A stretch of DNA of 64,000 nt from Vitrella brassicaformis CCMP3155 (taxonomy: Eukaryota; Protista; Chromerida), in contig CDMY01000227.1 of the NCBI GenBank assembly GCA_001179505.1, forward strand, positions 62,001 to 126,000, read 5' to 3'. Position 1 is the stretch's first letter, and each line of letters begins with the position of its first letter. A program made the translations under genes and the position numbers. Positions 73 through 32,392 of this stretch are shown one piece after another. Below the pieces are notes generated by a model. The model was not told the origin of the DNA and did no database searches. It was given only the letters and a program-made list of their open reading frames with translations.

Positions 73-3000
73 GCAGGTGCGATCAGATTGGGAGAAGACG
101 GTGTTCGACCTGCGCAAGACCAACCACGAGCTGGCGGTCCAGCACTACGAAGACCTGCAGGCCAAAGGTACACACACACACACACAAACACATACCATAA
201 TCCACACACTCCCAAGCAATGAAAGCGCTGTCTCTTTGGTTATCTGTCTGTCTGTCTGTCTGCAGCCGCCCTCCAGACGGACGTGACTGAGCTGCGCAAG
301 GAGCTCTTCTCCCTACAGTCAGAGCTCGAGCAGCACAAAGCCCTCCTGGCCAGGCGGCTGACCACCCCCCAGCCACCACCCACCCCACTCCTGCCTGCCC
401 CAATGCCATACCCCCCCTCACACGCCCCCGACACCCACACCCAGACCGACACGGAAGAGATGGTGCAGCGGCTGCGTGCGGCCGTGCAGGAGAAGAACGC
501 TCTGCGGATGGAGCTGGACGTCCTCAAGGAGCAGCGACGCTTCAGCCTCATCGACGGCATCAGCGACGGCAACTCGCCTACACGTCATGGCACAGCGACA
601 GCAGCGGCGGCAGCAGCAGCAGCGGCATCAGGAGCACTCTCTGACACCGTCCTGTCGCCCAGAGATGGAGTGGGACTGGGGGTGACAGATACGGGTGGAG
701 AGGGGGTTGGTGAGGCGCAGCCGATGCCGCCCCGTGTTGGCAACGGGCGGGGCCCCGCGCTGCCCACCCTTATGGAGGAGAAGGACGAGGAAGAGATGGT
801 GGCCGACAAATCGCCAGCTGCCCCCTCGGTGCCACCTGAGCAGATTGCCCTCCACTCACACCCACCCCCTCCACCAGCACCCAAGACCGAAGACGCCCCT
901 CCCCCATCCCTAGCCTCACTCACACAGCCACAGCCACAGGCCCAGTTGCAGCAGCAGCGGCCGAGGGAGAAGGAGACCATTCTCAAGCGTGAAGACGACC
1001 AAGGGGCGGCGTTGCCGACACCTGTAGACAGCCGCAATGAGGGAATGCAGGAGGCGGGAGAGGAAGAGGATGAGGGAGATGGGGAGGAGTCGCCAGAGGG
1101 CGGGGGCCAGGAGGACGGCGGGCAGGCAGACATCATCTCACACCAACCCCCGCCTGGCCCACCACCATCACTGGCACCACCAGCCGCAGCAGCAGTAGTC
1201 ATGAAGGAGGTCCACCCGTCGTCGATGGGCGGTCGTCAGGAGACGGCGGAGACCGCTTCATCGGCTGGAGGGGGAGAGGCGGCCACCGTGGCCGTGGGAC
1301 GTGTCAAGGAGGAGACAGAGGGCCTGGGTGCTGCGAGCGCGTCGGCGACCGGGGCGATGGCGTCCGTCCAGGTAGTGGATGGTGGCGGGAATATCATGCT
1401 GTTGGTATCTATGTGTGTGTGTGCTGTCGTGTGTGTGCGTGAGAAGCCGCTGCAGCGCATTCGTGGGATGATATGTTCGTCTACCGAGAAGCTGCGTCGG
1501 GTGCGGGGTGCGGCGGAGGATCCTGAGCTGGAGGGGCAGATCAAAAGGATACTCGCTAAGGACATATTCGAGTAACTCAGCCAGCCAATCAGCGAGACAC
1601 AATGGCTCAGCACCATATCGGTGTGTGCTCTCTGTCTGCTCCAATGTCAGCTCTACAGTGCGCCGCATCGGCCCCGGCCTGTTCCAGTTTGGAGAATTCA
1701 CCTGCAAGGTACCCAAATCGACAACACCACACACGCACTCACACCCAACACACAGACCGCCCCAGCATCAACTGTGCCATCTCCTGTCCACCCGTCACCT
1801 ACGTCAGGTCCGTTTTGTAGCCGGCAGCCGCACCCAACTGGAGGCCTGTCTCGTCCATGACGCGCCTGCTCTCACCACCACCACCACAGCCGGCCCCCTC
1901 ACCCAGCGCGACGGCAGCCCACGCGAGGGCCCCTACAGCGACTTTGAGGTGTTTGTCAAGTTCCTCAACAGCGAGCGGTCCCGGGGCATGACCGACAGGT
2001 CCCACCACCATCCATACCACCACCACAAGTCGGCCTCCTCCAGCGACCTCCCCACCGCACCGCACCCCGTGGCCATCGCAGCAATGAAGTCACTCGCCAA
2101 GGCGGCTGCAGTGGCCAGGCAGGGGCATCAGGGCGCCCTGACGGTGGACGACACCCACCACCACCACCACCACCAGCAGCAGCAGGTGCATGTGGTGCCG
2201 CCCCCTGCGTCCGTCACATCCATGGCTGAGGAGCGGCGCATCAGGTTCGAGCCGCCAGGGGTGGTGGAGAGCTCGCCGTCGGTGTGTCTCGTGCAGCCAG
2301 AGGGGGACATGGACACGGGGAGCCCCGGCCGCATACCTGGGGCAGACCCGCAGCGTGTCGAGAGGAGGCCAGTAGCACAGCACAAGGGGGACGGGAGAGG
2401 GGGAGGGGGAGGGGGGGCTGCGCCGTTCACCACTCGCGCAGTGGTTCAGACCACCACAGGTGGGTGAGAGAAAAAGACTCTGACACAGGCACACTGCATC
2501 CATCTCTCCATCGATGCTGGCTGTTCTGTCCTGTTGGTCAGATTTCTCTGCCGCTCAGCAGCAGATGGGTGGGGGTAGTGGACCTTATGGCCCAGCGGCC
2601 GTCAAGTACGTCTTCCCCTCCGTCCGATACACCCTCTCGCCCTACAGCAGACCCCAGCCACATCCACACCCACACTCGGGTGTGCTGCCGGGCTACCAAC
2701 TGGCGAGAGGTCCTGGGATGCCTCCTCAGGCCAAGAAGGGTCAGGCCACCAGGCCGCCCATGGCCAAGTCGGCTGGCAGGGGGGCCATGGAGGGGGCAGG
2801 AGGGGGAGGGGCCGTGCGCGTGGGGGGGAGACAGATGCAGAACAACCCACCGTCGCCGTACCAGGCGCCCATCCGACCCGTGCAACACATGGTACGAGCG
2901 AGGAGAGAAAGATGGATGCCCCGTGCATGATTTGATTGTCGATGCATCCATGGCCTTTCTTGTCTTGTCTCTCGTGCAGGGTGTCCCTGGCCCTGCGATG

Positions 3001-3586: not shown

Positions 3587-4458
3587 CTGAAGGGGCCGTG
3601 AGGGACTGATTGCTTATTGATGGGACGTAGCCGATGGCTGCCTAATGCATGATACGTCAAAGGCGATCTCTGTGTGTGTGTGTGTGTTGGCGGTGGTAGC
3701 TGTGGACTCTATGTGTGAGAGGAGGGAGGGAGGGAGGGAGGGAGGGAAGTAGCAGTGCTTGGCTGCTTGCTTGATTAGAAGACGATTTTGATCTCCGCCA
3801 TGCATCAATTAAGGGATTCAATGGCTCACGGACACACCACACGAACACGGTCTTAAACCCAAAATCAGTCCAGCAAACGACGCCCCTTACCCCTCCCAAC
3901 ATCCAACGAACAAAACGCCACACGTCACAGCAACCGACACAGCACAGCAACGGCAAAGGACTGATGAGTGGCCCACTACGGCTCCTCATTATTCCCCAGC
4001 GACGCATACACATGGTCATCTTTTCGCCTCCTAGTGGGGCTTTCCAACAGCACATCGATTCTATCCTGCCCCTGCTGCTGCCCCTCTCCCCCCTCCCCCT
4101 CAGGGTCTGCATGGGGGTGTTTGTCCGCGGCAGCGGGGGTCCGCCTGACCTTGAGAAACCCCAGCTGCAGCACCGGCCTCCGAGAAGACGATGCTGTGGA
4201 GGACTTCCCGCTGTCGCATTGTGGGGGGTAGGGGCAGGCGTCGTTGTTGTTGTCGTCGCTATCGTTGCCTTCGGGTCTGTGGGACCCGTGGGCTGGCTCT
4301 TCCTCTGTCACGGGGCAGCTGATACTGTCGCCTCTCGACTCACGAAGCTCTTGCGACAACAGGTCTTTCGTCTCTGCAGACAGACACAGCAAGGGAGGGA
4401 GACATTTGTGACACAGCACAACAAACAAATGTCCTCTTGCTTTGCTTCCTCTCGATGC

Positions 4459-5900
4459 TCACTCACCTAGAAGCTCATTGGTCTTTGCCGTGACGACACT
4501 CCGCCCGTCGCTTTCCTCCTCCTTAGTCTTGGTAGTGAAGGTCCGAGAGAGGCCCATCGACCGCATGCTCGTCACCGCCCCTCCCTCACTGTCCGCCCCA
4601 ATCGTGCGCCGCCGGCTGCTGCCCCCCTCCTTGAACGACACACCGGCGCCCTTCTTCCACCCGTGGCCGCCACTCTTGTTGGCATGGTCTCGCTCAGAAA
4701 CCGCCCCCAGCCGAGAGGCGTTCGTCGTGACGCCGGACCGCTGTGTCTCCGTAGTGGCCATCGCCCGCATAGCGTCCTTCAGCTTGCTCCGACGCCGCAC
4801 CGTCCAGATGGTGAGGGCAAGCGCGACAAGCACGAGCGCCAAGCCGATGGAGGTGCCGATGATCAACACGGACAGGTCGCTGCCAGTGGTGTCTGTGAAA
4901 AGGCGTCCGAGGGTCAGGTCGCCCTTTGTGATGAAGAACGGCCCAAAAGCGGCTACGGTGTCGCTGCTGATGGGCTCGAGGGCCCTCGCTGTGGAAGTTC
5001 CTTGGCATGGGACGCAGTCGGGCTCGTTGCACAGCCTGATGCTGCAGAAGAGGTAGCCGTATTGGGTGCCGGCGAATGAGAAGGATGGAGTGGAGAAGCG
5101 GACGGTGTGGCTTTCCTGAAAGTACACGTCAGTCGGGATGGGCCGCTCCAGAGCACAGCCGCCCTCTATCATTTTCTAAGCAACAGAATGCCACAACATA
5201 CCAGGATCGTGTCTCCTTGCCGGCCAGGTAAAGGCCCGTGACTTACATAGCCAAGGTTGACGGGCAGCGGGGAGCTCGCCCCCGCCCAACAGTCCACCAA
5301 ATTAACATATAGCTTCTCCACCAGCTCGGTGGGCAGGTTAGTGGTGTCCAGCTTGACCTCGACATAGAACTTGCTCGACGCCTCCTGCCCCTCCTCGACA
5401 GTGAACTTCTGAGGCGGGACGACGGGCTGCAGACATTCGTCATCGCGACACAGCGTCATCGACACGTCGTACGTGCTGTTGCCGGTCACTCGGATGCGCC
5501 TGTATCCGTTGGCGATGGGGATGTTGACCTGCCCGTCGCTATTGCGCAGACACTGCCCCGTGGCGTTGAACACCGTGTCGTTGACCTGTATAGTGCCCAC
5601 CTGCCCGATGACCTCAAACCCCTCCGGCAGATCTGGCGCGGCTGGGCCCTCGTTGTCCGCGAGGCAGCCCTCGAAAGGGATAGAGAGGCAGTACTCGTTC
5701 GGCTGTGTGACCCCAGGGCATGGCGCCCCGGACGTGTCAAGCCACTCGGCAGTGCAGTTGCAGAGCACCTCGTCGAAACACAGCACCATTGCGTCAGCCT
5801 GGCATTCCACCGTGGCCGTCAGGAATGAATCAGCAGCCACGGTAAAGGGCAGGAGGGCTGCCATGATGAGGCAGGCGGAGGCGAGGGCCGCCTTTTTCAT
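4459..5900 (-). CDS. Type I membrane protein with a signal peptide and a zona pellucida (ZP-N + ZP-C) module, about 456 aa in 2 exons
   Basis: Exon 1 is 5900-5247 (654 nt, phase 0, GTAAGT donor) and exon 2 is 5175-4459. The signal peptide is MKKAALASACLIMAALLPFTVAA. ZP-like motifs are VECQADAMVL, FYVEVKL, LYVNLVDCWA, Y-KMIEGGC, RFSTPSFSFAG, YLFCSIRLC and an EHP-like DTVAAFGPFFI. These are followed by a TM helix (VLIIGTSIGLALVLVALALTIWTV) and a basic stop-transfer RRRSK. Confidence 0.8.
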
Positions 5901-6207
5901 GGCGTGAAAGGCCTTGCCAGTCGCGGGGATGGCTATATGAAGAAAGGTCGGGGATGAAGCCTCGTGGGGCCGAGGAAAACGGCGGAAGAAAGCAGAAAAA
6001 GAGGCCGCTTCTTTACAAAGTGTGTCGTGGAAAGGGGGGGAGGGAGAGGGTGAGGCAATTGGGAGGGAAGGGAGAGTGCGAGCTGAGACCGTTCACACAT
6101 GCGAGCTAGAACGCGAGTCGAAGGGGAAGAGCGAGATCTTGATCAACCGTCGACTGCTGAGCCCGTTCGACCGACCGAGCGGCTTCATTTGTCAAGGATA
6201 GTTAAGG

Positions 6208-7570
6208 ATGGGAAGCCGCGGCGTGGCGGACATCAGCCAGGTGTACGAGCGCAACCAGGAGGCGACAGCCTACTGCGGCAATCTCGACCCGCGGGTGGAC
6301 GAGGAGACTCTCTGGGAGCTGTTCATCCAGTGCGGTCCTGTCAAGAACGTCCACATCCCCAGGGACAAGGTCACGGGAGGACACTCAGGTCGGTCAGCTC
6401 CACTCCATGCATACACACGTACCCAGCCAGCTGCCTGTCGTGTGCACGTGCGTCTATCTGTGGCGTGTCATCCATCCATGGTACGTCAGGGTATGGCTTT
6501 GTGGAGTTCCACAGCGAGGAGGACTGCGACTACGCCATCAAGATCATGAACATGGTCAAGCTCTACACCAAGCCACTGCGGTGCAACAAGTCGGCGCAGG
6601 ACAAGCGCACCCAGGAGGTTGGCGCCAACCTCTTCATCGGCAACCTCGACCCGGAAGTGGACGAGAAGCTCCTGTACGACACTTTCAGCGCCTTCGGCGT
6701 CCTCCTCTATGCGAAGGTGCCTCTAATCTAGCTGACACGGCTGGCACAGTGTGCGGCGCGTGTGTGGATGGGATAGGTGTGTGGGTGTTGTGTTAGGTGA
6801 TGCGTGACCCCGAGAGCGGGGAGTCCAAGGGCTATGGGTTTGTGGCCTACGACGCCTTCGAGTACTCGGATGCGGCCATGCAGGCCATGAACGGCCAGTT
6901 CCTATGCAACAGACCCGTCCACGTCTCATACGCCTACAAAAAGGACACCAAAGGTGTGCTGTGGACACACACACCAACACCAACACACTTCGGACGACAG
7001 GCGAGATGAGATCTCTGTGTGTCACCTGTTGGTGCGTTCAGGGGAGCGTCACGGTGCAGCAGCAGAGCGTCTCATCGCGGCGAATCGTCCCAAGGATTTG
7101 AAGATCCGCCCGCCACACACCATGTTCGCCAATGTCCCGACAGCCCCCGCACCTCTCGCCAGCGGTATGAGCCAGAACCCCACGACACACAACGCCAACA
7201 ACAATGTTGATCATCTTTTGTGTATGGCTGTTGTCACATATATCAGCTGGTCCCCCTCCGGGCCTGACGGCTCCCACCTCGACCTCAGCCGCGTCCATGG
7301 CCGGCCCGCCGCCCGGCCTGGCACCCCCTGGCATCCCTCCACAGAACTTCAGGCCGCCAGTGGGGATGCCCGCACCACCCATGGCCGTCCCAACTCTGCC
7401 ACCAGGTGCGGTGCGTGTGACTGCTGTGGATGGATGGATGGATGGGAAGACGATGACACGTGTGTGTGTGTGTGTGTGTGTGTGTGGTGGTTGTGAGTGC
7501 AGGTATGCCTCCCCCTCCGATGCCGTTCTTCCCCCCGGGCATGCCGCCCTTCGCTCCACCAGCGCAATGA
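6208..7570 (+). CDS. SF3B4: Splicing factor 3B subunit 4 (SAP49/HSH49), with two RRMs and a Pro-rich tail
   Basis: [14 protein letters not shown]...[32 protein letters not shown]; [20 protein letters not shown]; [27 protein letters not shown]; [30 protein letters not shown] stop at 7568-7570. Confidence 0.97.
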
Positions 7571-28599: not shown

Positions 28600-30815
28600 G
28601 TGTGCTCTTGTCTGCCTTTATCACCTCTCGTCGTGTGTGATGCCGTGCCGTGCCGTGTCGTGTCCAGCTGGCTCTGTGCTGTCTTGATCCAAATGGCTGG
28701 CTGGCTGGCTGGCCGCCTCGGTCGGGGAGTCCGGGTGATTTGTTTTGATAAAGGGGGTGGGGGGTGGGAGGTGGGCCGGTGGCGGCGATGGGTGGCTGGT
28801 TTCGGATGGCTTGACTGACTGACTGGCAGCGCAGCGTGATGTGATGGATGGGATGCTTTATGACTGACCATTTTTTGCTGTCAATGTGCGACCGACAGCC
28901 GAGCCGGCTCTGACTGACTCACTCACTGACGCACTGACGTGCCCTTGTCTGTCTGTCTGTCTGTCTGTCTTGTCTGTACCATATCACCGTCACCATCGTC
29001 CGTCCATCAGAATGAGTTGAATGAGATGAATGGATGAGAGCAGGCCAGGTCTGCTCGCTTTTCATGACTTTCAATCAACGGCCGGCATGCAACCACTGCC
29101 TGCGAACCTGGGCGTGGGTGTCGGTGTGGGTGTGTCTGTGTTTCCCCTACCTACCACCCTTTTTTAATAGATCGATCCATGCGTGAGCAAAGAAAGGGGC
29201 TGGGCTGGCGATGGATGATATCAGACCACATTCTTGTCTGCGAATCGACCGTCGGCAGCCGTCAGTGGCCTGTTTCCAAGTGCGACAGCAATCTCTGTCT
29301 CTGTCCGCCGGTTTGCGGGGAGAGGTGGCGGTTGCCTTCGCCGTGTGGAAGCAGCCACCGATGTTGGGTGGGTGGATGGATGGATGGATGGACGAAGTAG
29401 TGGGTGGAAGACAGGAACCTAGTGGTCTCTGCTGGTGGAGTCAGTCGGGCGTGTACTCCCTCCTGTATTTTTTGCCCCCATCCGTGCACGAGATGGATGA
29501 GGATTCATTCGTATGGATGATTGGATGGTGGATAAGTGTGTGTGAGCTTTGGATGGAGTCGATCTGTCTGTTGGATGTCGGATGGATGGATGGATGTGCC
29601 TTAAGCCTCTTCTCAGTTCTCGAGGAGGTAATTGTTTAGTGCCTGGCTGTCTACCTTCCTGGCTGGCTGACTGCCTGCCTGCCTGCCTGCCTGCCGAGAA
29701 TGCAGCAATGGAGTGTTTAAGTGCACACATCAACACGGGCAGGCGGCACAGCGGGCTTCACTCACTCAGGCAGTCTGTCTGTCTGTCTCTGCGTGTGTGT
29801 ATGGGCGGTGGGGTTGTGTCGTGTCGTGTTGTGTGGCGTGGCGCGGCGTGATGTTTTTTTATCCAGTGATACATGTGTGTGAGTGCGTGTGCGTGTGGCC
29901 CTTGCTGAATAGGCGTTGCGTCGCATGGACACCTTTCTTTCTCTCCAACTCGTTGGTGGTCGGTGTGTATGTGTGTGTGTATGTGTGTATGTGTGGATGT
30001 TGGGCAGGGGTGTCTGTCTGTCTGGCTGCGTTGGTGACTCAGCGTCGTGTGCTGATTGAGTCAATGCATTGCAGCCCCTATATCACCCGCATGGCTGCCT
30101 GGCTGGTGGCAGGAGTCATTCGACCGATACACACACACACACACACATTCACAGGTCCACATGGATGCTGTCATGACACTTTATGGATCGCCATGTCTTG
30201 TCGCCCCGGCCACACCCCACCCACACACACGCACCAGCCATCGATTAGAAAAGGGCTCTTCTATCATTGACGAGCCGAGCCGCCTCCTTTCGCCCCTCAC
30301 GCCCAGCTGTAAACACATCAGAAAAGACCATAAAAGGACCAAAATAAACGTCAATCGACGGACGAGAAAGAAGCGGCCAGTCTTCTAGTCAGATCAGTCG
30401 TTTGGCAGTGTGGAGAGGGGACAGGCGCCTATCCTTTGACGCCATACCCTTAATTAATTACGTGTGTTGTTGTACACTCGGCTGAGCTGGCTAAAGATGG
30501 TAAATGGTGTGTTGTGTTCTGTGGCCTGCAGGGTACCTACCTAGCCAGCCCCACACCATCCTAGGTGCTATGTATGACCCACTGCAGGCGAAAACAAAAC
30601 ACACGACGGACGAAGCACAGCACCCTAGTAGGGGTGCAAAAACCGACAAAGAGCGATCCAAGGCCAGCAAACAGAGCAGCCAAACAGCCAAACAGACAGA
30701 CAGGCTAACAAACGCGTGTGTGTAGACCACCGCCAGACCAACCAAGCAGCCAAGGGGGCACCACTATAAGCAGTGAGTGAGAGCCATCCTTCCGTATCCG
30801 TGCCCTCCTGCCCTG
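28600..30815. repeat. Microsatellite-rich convergent intergenic region with (GGCT)n, (GACT)n, (GTCT)n, (GGAT)n, (GCCT)n and (CA)n tracts
   Basis: Visible simple repeats run throughout, and only low-complexity shadow ORFs are present. Confidence 0.8.
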
Positions 30816-31115
30816 NNNNNNNNNNNNNNNNNNNNNNNNNNNNNNNNNNNNNNNNNNNNNNNNNNNNNNNNNNNNNNNNNNNNNNNNNNNNNNNNNNNNN
30901 NNNNNNNNNNNNNNNNNNNNNNNNNNNNNNNNNNNNNNNNNNNNNNNNNNNNNNNNNNNNNNNNNNNNNNNNNNNNNNNNNNNNNNNNNNNNNNNNNNNN
31001 NNNNNNNNNNNNNNNNNNNNNNNNNNNNNNNNNNNNNNNNNNNNNNNNNNNNNNNNNNNNNNNNNNNNNNNNNNNNNNNNNNNNNNNNNNNNNNNNNNNN
31101 NNNNNNNNNNNNNNN
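30816..31115. other. Assembly gap (300 N)
   Basis: Run of N. It interrupts the 3' end of the SH3-like gene. Confidence 1.
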
Positions 31116-32392
31116 TTCCTCGTACTGCGTGTGTGTGAGGTGCCACTTGGTGACCTCACTGATCTGCCTGTCATAGCCCGGCACCCTGGCACGGTTGTCG
31201 GCTATCACGCCCTCAAAAAGGGGCGCCGACACGACGAACCACTCGACCATATCGCACCCCCGACACACCACCACCAGCCGCCCGCCAGTCAGAGTGGACG
31301 CCAGCCCCTCGTACTGCCGCTGCATGAACCTGGGCATGTGGGACAGGCCCACCCACATGGCCAGGCCCACCGCACCGTAAGGATTGCCCAGGGTATTGAC
31401 GTCCCACCAGTTGGCGAAGAGCTCCGTCCCCTCCTGCCTCTCCCTCTCGGTGGCTGGGGTAAATAGGTTGACCTGCTTCATGGCGCCATAGGATGTCGGG
31501 AACCACCCCACCGCCCCTGCACTCGGGTCGGTCAGCACCACGCCCATCACCGTGCCCTTCCGCGCGCCTCTGCCCTTGGAATTCACCTCCATCAGCACGC
31601 CCTCGCCCAGCACGCAGCTGCCGCTCACGTCACTGACCAGGGCGTACGTGCGCCAGATCTGGGGCTGCTTGAGGTGCTTCTCGTCCTCGGTGTCAGGGAA
31701 GACGTCTGCCAGCGACTGATGTAACACACCACACACAGTGACACAGACACCCAGAAAAGGTCAAGAGTATGTGTGTGTGTGTGTGTGTGTGCTGCGTACC
31801 TTGGCCTTTGAGAACTTCTCGAGAAGTTCCTCCCTCGTCATGCCCATGAGGGTGGCGGGGGCGTCTGTTGGTGTGGAGCTGCCTGCACAGCACATCCAAA
31901 TGCGCACGCACACACACCTGTGAGTCCATCGTACGTATCATCTGTGTGCGCACCTGTGGGTGTGTAGGTGCAGGTGTAGGTGTCTGTGGTCGATGTGCGA
32001 CTCATTGGCGAGGTACACGTATCCTCGTAGGTCCTGAAGAGGTCGTCACACACAGACGAGAACGTCAGTGACCTTGTGGAATGCAATGCATGCTGCAGCC
32101 ATGGAAAGGTGTGTGATCGACACTGCCGTACCCGTAGTTGCAGACGCGTCCGTCAGCACTGCCGTACCCGTAGTTGTACTGGTAGTGCCCCTGCATGCGC
32201 CCCTGCATGCGACAAGTACAGCCACCAAGACAGACATGACATGGGTGTAATTGGTGTGCAATGTGCATGCCATTGGTGGTGTGAAGTGCGCGTCCAGTCT
32301 GGACAGCAGTGTCTTTCCCCTCTTACCTGCATGTGGCTGGTGGTGCTGCCACCCTGTGGCCAGCCGCTCGTAGCTACGTTGGGCATAGGCAT
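31116..32392 (-). CDS. Hypothetical protein with a degenerate SH3-like segment, 3' end lost in the gap
   Basis: Manual splice: MPMPNVATSGWPQGGSTTSHMQ|GHYQYNYGYGSADGRVCNYG|TYEDTCTSPMSRTSTTDTYTCTYTPTG|SSTPTDAPATLMGMTREELLEKFSKAK|SLADVFPD...LGEGVLMEVNSKG...GAVGWFPTSY. All junctions are GT-AG and phase-compatible. Confidence 0.6.

What the first reader, a model, noticed from the sequence alone, without database searches (positions are those of the whole stretch)
4459..5900. Complete zona pellucida (ZP) module membrane protein in a protist-like genome
Seen: the spliced 456-aa protein has a signal peptide and a Cys pattern matching ZP-N (VEC, GAPC, FEGC, GQC). It also has ZP-C hallmarks (YVEVKL, VNLVDCWA, Y-KMIEGGC, RFSTPSFSF, YLFCSIRLC..C..C), then DTVAAFGPFFI (4962-4930), which resembles the external hydrophobic patch of ZP3 (DVTVGPLIF), then a TM helix and tail. 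Established: full ZP modules (ZP1-4, uromodulin, tectorins, cuticlins) polymerise into extracellular filaments and are generally described from animals. Inference: this organism may build a ZP-type polymeric coat or matrix (cyst, zoosporangium or gamete wall). The origin could be horizontal transfer or an older ancestry of the module. The canonical RxRR cleavage site before the EHP is replaced by TARAL, so activation may use a different protease.
Basis: partly seen in the sequence, partly recalled or inferred. Interest (0 to 1): 0.92.

Follow-up and report, generated by a model that had tools for sequence, protein, structure and literature searches.

The report
ZP-module membrane protein in an alga
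A single-celled alga (apparently Vitrella, a relative of malaria parasites) has an expressed gene for a membrane protein that carries at least the second half, and probably both halves, of the zona pellucida (ZP) module that animals use to build egg coats, which reviews still treat as animal-only.

Summary
Its gene model is short. RNA contigs confirm the 71-nt intron and show a second 93-nt intron, so the protein has 586 residues, not 456. The extra part is cytoplasmic tail.

**ZP-C: real.** Pfam PF00100 matches the two exon pieces separately on collinear halves of its profile (15.7 and 24.4 bits against a cut-off of 24.6). The only solved-structure match is uromodulin.

**ZP-N: likely, not shown.** Pfam and PDB sequence searches find nothing. 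Protein-language-model features point specifically to ZP-N clusters (0.92, falling to 0.66 when ZP families are left out).

**Fold: untested.** Both single-sequence AlphaFold runs failed. The spliced protein has no reference, so it could not be folded.

**Rest of the architecture.**
- A hydrophobic-patch-like strand, a membrane helix and a 242-residue tail follow ZP-C.
- There is no polybasic cleavage site.

**Origin.** The gene looks native: matching composition, short GT-AG introns, and DNA contigs from three runs that link it to the neighbouring RRM gene.

I read it as a membrane-anchored ZP-module surface protein. Release and polymerisation remain open.

This scan has already noted ZP-like modules at other loci of this genome, two of them followed up. 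I found no paper reporting ZP modules in chromerids or alveolates.

The parts
5247..5900 (-). Coding exon 1, residues 1-218. It starts at the first ATG of the frame.
   Evidence: Sequence and ORF list. The splice donor at 5246 is confirmed by an RNA contig of run X6.
5176..5246 (-). Intron 1, 71 nt, GT..AG. It splits the ZP-C domain.
   Evidence: The X6 RNA contig joins 5247 to 5175.
4467..5175 (-). Coding exon 2: residues 219-454 and the first base of codon 455.
   Evidence: RNA contigs; translation.
4374..4466 (-).
   Evidence: RNA contigs of runs X1 and X6 both join 4467 to 4373.
3976..4373 (-). Coding exon 3: the rest of codon 455 to residue 586, plus the stop at 3978-3976. All of it is cytoplasmic tail.
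   Evidence: The X6 RNA contigs run unspliced across 3845-4373. The spliced coding sequence is 1761 nt, in frame, with a single terminal stop.
5832..5900 (-). Signal peptide, residues 1-23 (KK, a hydrophobic core, then VAA|D).
   Evidence: Hydropathy scan. Inspection only; no dedicated predictor was available.
5529..5819 (-). ZP-N-like domain, residues 28-124. It has eight Cys (33, 41, 47, 49, 61, 71, 79, 117); Cys33 and Cys117 are spaced like Cys1 and Cys4.
   Evidence: Atlas features give ZP-N/CUT_N clusters at 0.92 with 181 of 256 features shared. Leaving out ZP families drops the best named cluster to 0.66. There is no Pfam or PDB sequence hit, and the AlphaFold model was poor.
5247..5480 (-). 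ZP-C domain, first half, residues 141-218. Cys151, 156 and 204.
   Evidence: Pfam PF00100 profile positions 2-61, 15.7 bits, E 0.017.
5005..5175 (-). ZP-C domain, second half, residues 219-275. Cys225, 262, 267, 272 and 275.
   Evidence: Pfam PF00100 profile positions 71-132, 24.4 bits, E 3.4e-5. Uromodulin chain 28yj_A residues 259-315, E 0.0079, with Cys225, 262, 267 and 275 aligned to its cysteines.
4963..5004 (-). Spacer, residues 276-289, at the position where ZP precursors carry their cleavage site. It has no polybasic motif, only the single Arg283 in TARAL.
   Evidence: Direct reading of the translation.
4930..4962 (-). External-hydrophobic-patch-like strand, residues 290-300.
   Evidence: Sequence and position only. 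It lies 15 residues after the last ZP-C Cys and 18 before the membrane helix. It was not tested structurally.
4798..4875 (-). Membrane helix, residues 319-344, followed by RRR.
   Evidence: Hydropathy maximum of 2.74 over 19 residues.
3979..4797 (-). Cytoplasmic tail, residues 345-586, interrupted by intron 2. It has no recognisable domain. It contains ETKDLL (455-460) and YASL (577-580).
   Evidence: No Pfam family on either tail piece; translation.
5901..6070 (-). 5' untranslated region covered by an RNA contig.
   Evidence: X6 RNA contig covering 5642-6070.

Best explanation
This is a native, expressed, three-exon gene on the minus strand. The coding sequence runs from 5900 to 3976. The genome is a non-animal alga that earlier scan notes name as Vitrella brassicaformis.

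**Architecture of the 586-residue type I membrane glycoprotein.**
- Signal peptide, residues 1-23.
- An eight-cysteine ZP-N-like domain, about 28-124.
- A short linker.
- A ZP-C domain, 141-275.
- A 14-residue spacer without a polybasic site.
- A hydrophobic strand like the external hydrophobic patch, 290-300.
- A membrane helix, 319-344.
- A 242-residue disordered cytoplasmic tail.

**Shown.** The gene structure, its transcription, the ZP-C domain and the topology elements.

**Inferred.**
- The N-terminal domain is a true ZP-N, so the ectodomain is a complete ZP module.
- The patch-like strand completes the ZP-C beta-sandwich, as it does in animal ZP precursors.
- There is no furin-type site and the tail is long and carries sorting-type motifs. 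I therefore think the protein most likely stays anchored in the membrane. There it would act as a surface or wall-attachment ZP protein, possibly tying a matrix built by cleavable paralogues to the cell, unless a non-furin protease releases it.
For: **Gene model and transcription.** Spliced RNA contigs from two runs give a 1761-nt in-frame coding sequence.

**ZP-C.**
- PF00100 hits both exon pieces on complementary, exactly collinear halves of the profile: 15.7 bits (E 0.017) and 24.4 bits (E 3.4e-5) against a cut-off of 24.6.
- Uromodulin is the only PDB sequence match, with four cysteines aligned.

**ZP-N.**
- Language-model features of residues 26-126 alone give ZP-N/CUT_N clusters at 0.92 with 181 of 256 features shared.
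- With ZP families left out, the best named cluster falls to 0.66 and is still a ZP1/ZP4 Ig-like cluster.
- The whole of exon 1 gives ZP-N/ZP-C clusters at 0.92 with 201 features shared.
- Cys33 and Cys117 are 84 residues apart, similar to the 80 alignment positions between Cys1 and Cys4 in nematode modules (PMC7456536).

**Native gene.**
- GC by codon position is 0.59/0.49/0.78, like other long coding ORFs of the window.
- Window GC is even, at about 0.6.
- Contigs from three DNA runs carry both ZP ORFs next to the RRM gene.

**Staying anchored.** There is no polybasic site between Cys275 and the patch-like strand, and the tail is 242 residues long.
Against: - ZP-N has no Pfam or PDB sequence support.
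- There is no structural evidence. AlphaFold on single sequences gave pLDDT 37.6 and 43.0. The spliced protein could not be submitted because no reference exists for joined exons.
- PF00100 was never scored on the joined sequence, so 'above the cut-off' is a sum of two pieces.
- No homologue was retrieved by any search. Conservation of the patch-like strand, the linker and the tail is therefore unknown.
- The searches also failed to list the window's own ORF products, which one search shows are on record. The blanks therefore say little.
- A single Arg (283) could still be a cleavage site for a trypsin-like protease, which would favour release.
- The organism's name rests on an earlier scan note, not on my own test.
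Confidence: 0.7

Rival explanations
1. Released polymer subunit. A non-furin protease cuts between Cys275 and residue 290 and the patch-like strand leaves. The freed ZP module then polymerises head to tail into filaments of a cell, sporangium or zoospore coat, as uromodulin and ZP3 do.
For: - The order and spacing of the elements (ZP-C, spacer, hydrophobic strand, membrane helix) are those of polymerising precursors.
- The cleavage and patch-release mechanism is established for animal ZP proteins (PMC7456536).
- Arg283 is a possible monobasic site.
- First-reader notes report furin-type sites in other ZP-like genes of this genome (unchecked leads).
Against: - There is no polybasic site.
- Polymerising ZP precursors such as ZP3 and GPI-anchored uromodulin have short cytoplasmic tails or none (from general knowledge, not tested here). 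This tail is 242 residues long.
- There are no expression, proteomic or structural data.
Confidence: 0.35
2. Standalone ZP-C protein. Only residues 141-300 are ZP-related, and the eight-cysteine N-terminal domain is an unrelated beta-rich module. This would not be a complete ZP module.
For: - Pfam ZP-N and CUT_N models and PDB sequence searches find nothing in residues 26-126.
- Standalone ZP-C domains exist in nematodes (PMC7456536, title and abstract).
- This N-terminal domain has eight cysteines, whereas canonical ZP-N has four.
Against: - Language-model features of residues 26-126 alone point to ZP-N clusters and to nothing else above 0.66.
- The domain sits directly before ZP-C with a linker of about 16 residues.
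- The spacing of its first and last cysteines matches that of Cys1 and Cys4.
Confidence: 0.2
3. Animal contamination, a chimeric scaffold, or very recent horizontal transfer from an animal such as a coral host.
For: - ZP modules are otherwise described from animals (PMC13361971).
- Chromerids are associated with the coral holobiont (PMC4501334).
Against: - Contigs from three DNA runs carry the ZP ORFs beside the RRM gene.
- GC and codon-position GC match the rest of the window.
- The introns are 71 and 93 nt, and the neighbouring RRM gene is likewise split into short pieces.
- No animal protein came up in an exhaustive search of 1.84 billion representatives with exon 1. A recent transfer would have given strong hits.
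- An ancient transfer is not excluded.
Confidence: 0.03
4. Chance resemblance. This would be a cysteine-rich beta-protein that is not homologous to ZP domains. The first half also weakly matches CBM60.
For: - Each Pfam hit is below the gathering score on its own.
- CBM60 scores as well as PF00100 on residues 136-198 (16.1 bits).
- There is no fold evidence.
Against: - Two independent pieces hit the same family out of 24,736, in the right order and with zero net gap across the junction.
- CBM60 has no continuation in exon 2.
- Uromodulin is the sole PDB match.
- Language-model features independently give ZP clusters.
Confidence: 0.03

Closest known systems
Uromodulin / GP2 / ZP3-type ZP-module precursors of animals
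   Same: - The same order of parts: signal peptide, ZP-N, linker, ZP-C, hydrophobic strand, membrane anchor.
- The second half of ZP-C aligns with uromodulin, including the GC motif and the C-x4-C pair at the end of the domain.
- The ectodomain carries N-glycosylation sequons at N48, N107, N112 and N141 (positions; motifs read from the sequence).
   Different: - No polybasic cleavage site.
- Eight rather than four cysteines in the ZP-N region, and two extra in ZP-C (Cys156, Cys272).
- A 242-residue cytoplasmic tail.
- A non-animal host.
- No detectable pairwise similarity outside about 57 residues.
Endoglin and betaglycan (TGF-beta co-receptors): ZP modules that stay on the membrane and do not polymerise
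   Same: A type I membrane protein with a ZP module next to the membrane and no activating cleavage site. This is the functional model I favour. The comparison is from general knowledge and was not tested here.
   Different: - There is no sequence match to either in the PDB search.
- Their tails are short and conserved, whereas this tail is long and has no recognisable domain.
- Endoglin has lost the Cys6-Cys8 bond (PMC7456536). Here candidates for both cysteines are present.
Nematode cuticlins and standalone ZP-C proteins
   Same: - Variable cysteine numbers and reshuffled disulfides within a recognisable module (PMC7456536).
- CUT_N clusters are among the language-model neighbours.
   Different: - Cuticlins carry a consensus cleavage site (PMC7456536), and they form cuticle polymers (from general knowledge, not tested here).
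- No Pfam CUT_N or CUT_C hit here.
ZP-like domains of choanoflagellates (Salpingoeca rosetta)
   Same: A ZP-related domain in a unicellular organism (PMC13361971).
   Different: - The review describes those domains as lacking the full two-part architecture and cysteine pattern.
- They belong to close relatives of animals, whereas this gene is in an alveolate-type alga, far from animals.
- This gene has candidates for all eight canonical cysteines plus the CysA/CysB pair.
Other ZP-like genes noted by this scan in the same genome (s1-197146, s1-080116 and others)
   Same: The same genome and the same claimed module. Two were followed up and read as ZP modules.
   Different: - I could not retrieve or compare their sequences.
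- None lies in this window.
- Several are said to have furin-type sites, which this one lacks.

Membership tests
ZP module proteins (ZP-N + ZP-C) | ZP-C domain recognised by the family profile (Pfam PF00100) | tested here: met
   - Residues 141-210 match profile positions 2-61 at 15.7 bits.
- Residues 220-275 match profile positions 71-132 at 24.4 bits.
- The two matches are collinear with no net gap. The cut-off is 24.6 bits.
- Caveat: the two pieces were scored separately, because the joined protein has no reference.
ZP module proteins (ZP-N + ZP-C) | ZP-N domain directly N-terminal to ZP-C | tested here: inconclusive
   - No Pfam ZP-N or CUT_N hit and no PDB sequence hit.
- Language-model features give ZP-N clusters at 0.92, against 0.66 for everything else.
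ZP module proteins (ZP-N + ZP-C) | Eight conserved cysteines (Cys1-4 in ZP-N, Cys5-8 in ZP-C), with CysA/CysB in many modules | tested here: inconclusive
   - Candidates exist for all of them: 33 and 117 as Cys1 and Cys4; two of 41-79 as Cys2 and Cys3; 151, 204, 225 and 275 as Cys5-8; 262 and 267 as CysA and CysB.
- Only 225, 262, 267 and 275 are backed by an alignment.
- The rest are assigned by spacing, following PMC7456536.
- Six further cysteines are present.
ZP module proteins (ZP-N + ZP-C) | Two Ig-like beta-sandwich folds that superpose on solved ZP modules | tested here: inconclusive
   - AlphaFold on single sequences gave pLDDT 37.6 (residues 24-218) and 43.0 (residues 27-124).
- No fold search was run on such models.
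- ZP-C is split by intron 1, and the joined protein could not be submitted.
Polymerising ZP precursors (ZP3, uromodulin type) | Consensus polybasic (furin or hepsin type) cleavage site between ZP-C and the external hydrophobic patch | tested here: not met
   Residues 276-289 hold a single Arg (TARAL) and no dibasic motif. The 2026 review notes that the site is not universal (PMC13361971).
Polymerising ZP precursors (ZP3, uromodulin type) | External hydrophobic patch between the cleavage site and the membrane anchor | tested here: inconclusive
   A hydrophobic strand with a central GP (residues 290-300) sits 15 residues after Cys275 and 18 before the helix. This is a resemblance by position and composition only.
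Polymerising ZP precursors (ZP3, uromodulin type) | Demonstrated assembly into extracellular filaments | not testable with these tools
   This needs expression, microscopy or wall proteomics.
ZP module proteins (ZP-N + ZP-C) | Secretory-pathway entry (signal peptide) and an extracellular location for the module | tested here: met
   There is an N-terminal hydrophobic leader with an AxA-type end, one membrane helix followed by RRR, and four sequons in the ectodomain. This is by inspection and hydropathy, not by a dedicated predictor.

The most novel reading that the evidence does not exclude
The complete ZP module is not an animal invention. Chromerid algae carry a diversified family of ZP-module genes, this one included. 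The family arose either by descent from a much older eukaryotic ancestor or by an ancient transfer between reef animals and their algal associates. These algae use the family to build or anchor a ZP-type filament matrix in their cell or sporangium wall.
Probability: 0.3. Interest if true: 0.85.

Novelty: new member of a known kind. Interest (0 to 1): 0.66.

Why it matters

A genuine ZP module in an alveolate alga would do one of two things. It would push the origin of the module far below animals, or it would document an ancient gene exchange between animals and coral-associated algae.

It would also give a simple, culturable unicellular system for asking what ZP modules did before egg coats existed, and how a ZP protein without a furin site is activated or used.

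I found no paper that mentions zona pellucida together with Vitrella, Chromera or alveolates, and no report of a ZP domain in apicomplexans or dinoflagellates. The chromerid genome paper and its 16 text supplements do not mention it either.

**Limits on novelty.**
- This is one of several such loci that this scan has already noted in the same genome.
- Public domain databases may already label such proteins automatically. I could not check that.

Tried and rejected
1. **Homologue searches, all blank or spurious.**
   - The word-index search found nothing with exon 1, exon 2, or residues 219-313 at E up to 10.
   - The exhaustive search of 1.84 billion representatives with exon 1 gave three hits. 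All three are repeat proteins without ZP domains: two carry PKD and CHU_C (type IX secretion) domains and one carries TIG repeats.
   - Two metagenome scans found nothing.
   - These blanks are weak. The window's own ORF products are on record yet were not listed, so proteins of this genome seem not to be returned.
2. **Structure.** AlphaFold without an alignment gave pLDDT 37.6 for residues 24-218 and 43.0 for residues 27-124. I ran no fold search on them, since low-confidence models give meaningless matches.
3. **The joined protein.** Folding or Pfam-scoring the spliced protein was left out.
4. **ZP-N by Pfam** on two slices of the N-terminal domain gave no family.
5. **PDB sequence search** with exon 1 gave nothing. 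With the first half of ZP-C it gave only a chance-level hit to translocon subunit delta.
6. **CBM60** as an alternative for residues 136-198 was rejected. It scores 16.1 bits against a cut-off of 28.2, matches only part of its profile, and has no continuation in exon 2.
7. **Tandem paralogue in the window:** none by tblastn or in the ORFs downstream.
8. **Tail function:** no Pfam family on either tail piece.
9. **More RNA runs:** none was listed.
10. **Run accessions.** Mapping ERR558149, ERR558151 and ERR558200 to the Vitrella study through papers failed.
11. **File search.** A script looking for local profile files timed out and was dropped.
Full report
**What is there.**

The finding lies on the minus strand. 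Reading 5900 downwards gives an ORF that starts with a typical signal peptide and runs to a GT at 5246. A 71-nt intron ends at the AG at 5177-5176, and the frame resumes at 5175.

Laying public contigs on 3600-6400 showed two kinds of run:
- Runs X2 and X4 hold the locus unspliced, so they are DNA.
- Runs X6 and X1 hold spliced contigs. X6 joins 5247 to 5175. Both X6 and X1 join 4467 to 4373.

The coding sequence is therefore 5900-5247, 5175-4467 and 4373-3976. That is 1761 nt, in frame, encoding 586 residues. RNA contigs cover 3845-6070 apart from a 21-nt gap at 5621-5641.

**The observation.**

The ectodomain has 16 cysteines:
- 33, 41, 47, 49, 61, 71, 79 and 117 in the N-terminal part.
- 151, 156, 204, 225, 262, 267, 272 and 275 in the second part.

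A membrane helix (319-344, then RRR) and a 242-residue tail follow.

**Is it a ZP-C domain? Yes.**

The joined protein has no reference and intron 1 breaks the frame, so I scored the exon pieces apart.

| Piece | Residues matched | PF00100 profile positions | Bits | E-value |
|---|---|---|---|---|
| Whole exon 1 | 141-209 | 2-60 | 13.0 | 0.11 |
| Whole exon 2 | 220-275 | 71-132 | 21.8 | 0.00021 |
| Slice of exon 1 | 141-210 | 2-61 | 15.7 | 0.017 |
| Slice of exon 2 | 220-275 | 71-132 | 24.4 | 3.4e-5 |

- The family cut-off is 24.6 bits.
- The two matches are in the right order. The 9 residues between them (211-219) correspond to the 9 unmatched profile positions (62-70).
- Once the second half has picked the family, the first half is a one-family test with P of about 7e-7 (0.017 divided by 24,736 families).
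- Against all solved structures, the only match of the second half is a uromodulin chain (28yj_A residues 259-315, E 0.0079). Its alignment pairs the GC motif and the cysteines at 225, 262, 267 and 275.
- A CBM60 match of equal weakness on residues 136-198 has no continuation, and I reject it.

**Is there a ZP-N domain? Probably, but it is not shown.**

Evidence against:
- Pfam finds no family in residues 26-126.
- PDB sequence search finds nothing.

Evidence for:
- The language-model Atlas, given residues 26-126 alone, returns ZP-N and cuticlin-N clusters first, at 0.92 with about 180 of 256 features shared.
- When clusters with ZP families are left out, the best named cluster drops to 0.66 and is still a ZP1/ZP4 Ig-like cluster.
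- The whole of exon 1 gives ZP-N/ZP-C clusters at 0.92 with 201 features shared.
- By the tool's own figures, a first hit at 0.9 occurs for 4-10% of shuffled proteins. Landing on ZP-N, directly in front of a profile-detected ZP-C, is a much narrower target.
- Cys33 and Cys117 are 84 residues apart, similar to the 80 alignment positions between Cys1 and Cys4 in nematode modules (PMC7456536).

I put about 0.8 on a true ZP-N.

**Structure.**

Both AlphaFold jobs had to be run without an alignment and on exon-1 pieces only. They gave pLDDT 37.6 and 43.0. I ran no fold searches on such models. This is the main gap in the report.

**Relatives.**

No search returned a relative. The three hits of the exhaustive search are repeat proteins with no ZP domain. 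Two carry PKD and CHU_C domains and one carries TIG repeats.

These blanks carry little weight. The two ORF products of this very locus are on record as gene calls on contigs of ERR558151, ERR558149 and ERR558200, yet no search listed them.

There is no paralogue within the 64 kb.

**Native or contaminant?**

- GC is even across the window, at about 0.6 around the gene.
- The coding sequence has GC 0.59/0.49/0.78 by codon position, like other long coding ORFs here.
- The introns are short GT-AG introns.
- Contigs from three DNA runs carry both ZP ORFs next to the RRM-domain gene that starts about 6100 on the other strand.
- Nothing suggests an animal contaminant. A recent transfer from an animal would have given strong hits.
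- The name Vitrella brassicaformis comes from an earlier scan note. It fits the 2015 date of the runs and the chromerid genome paper (PMC4501334), but I did not test it.

**How it probably works.**

In animal ZP precursors, cleavage just after ZP-C removes the external hydrophobic patch and the membrane anchor. This frees the module to polymerise (PMC7456536).

This protein has the same order and similar spacing of elements:
- Last ZP-C cysteine at 275.
- Hydrophobic strand at 290-300.
- Helix at 319-344.

The 14 residues in between hold a single Arg and no polybasic site. The tail is long, has no recognisable domain, and carries ETKDLL (455-460) and YASL (577-580). Short motifs of this kind arise often by chance.

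My best reading is a ZP-module protein that stays in the membrane as a surface or wall-attachment protein. It may tie a matrix made by cleavable paralogues to the cell. I give the membrane-anchored reading about 0.45 and release by a non-furin protease followed by polymerisation about 0.35. Nothing here tests either.

**Known or new.**

- A 2026 review treats the canonical module as a metazoan synapomorphy and choanoflagellate domains as incomplete relatives (PMC13361971).
- I found no paper linking zona pellucida with Vitrella, Chromera or alveolates, and no report of a ZP domain in apicomplexans or dinoflagellates. The few papers that hold those terms concern animal proteins.
- The chromerid genome paper and its text supplements do not mention it.
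- This scan has already noted ZP-like modules at other loci of the same genome and followed up two of them. I treated these as leads only.
- This locus is therefore a further, somewhat unusual member: no furin site, extra cysteines, a long tail.

Noticed in passing
window 6070-6125: The ZP gene and the RRM-domain (SF3B4-like) gene are transcribed divergently. The RNA contigs of the two genes end only about 55 nt apart (6070 and 6125), which suggests a very compact shared promoter region. Word depth differs about 30-fold or more between them in run X6 (about 6 against 180-280).
   Followed up: no
window 4467/4373 (residues 455-460) and 3997-4008 (residues 577-580): The exon 2/3 junction creates ETKDLL, which fits the acidic dileucine pattern [DE]xxxL[LI]. 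YASL near the C-terminus fits the Yxx-hydrophobic pattern. Both are sorting-type motifs that exist only in the spliced 586-residue form. Such short motifs often occur by chance.
   Followed up: no
L001-L003 (contigs of ERR558151, ERR558149, ERR558200): The 243- and 237-residue ORF products of this locus are on record as gene calls. Neither the word-index search nor the representative search listed them when queried with identical sequence. Blank homology results for this genome should therefore not be read as absence.
   Followed up: partly
window 4081-4101, 5519-5539, 6033-6050: Two other contigs of DNA run X2 match only about 20 nt at these places, which produces an apparent joint from 4101 to 5519 with 1253 foreign letters between. 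This looks like short shared words, not a rearrangement.
   Followed up: no
window 30001-32000: GC drops to 0.49 here, against 0.55-0.65 elsewhere. An ORF at 30708-31760 (minus strand) has an unusually low GC of 0.45/0.34/0.56 by codon position.
   Followed up: no
window 283-1575 (+): A long ORF (430 residues) that is Ala-, Pro-, Gln- and Glu-rich and low in complexity lies downstream of the ZP gene. It was not examined.
   Followed up: no
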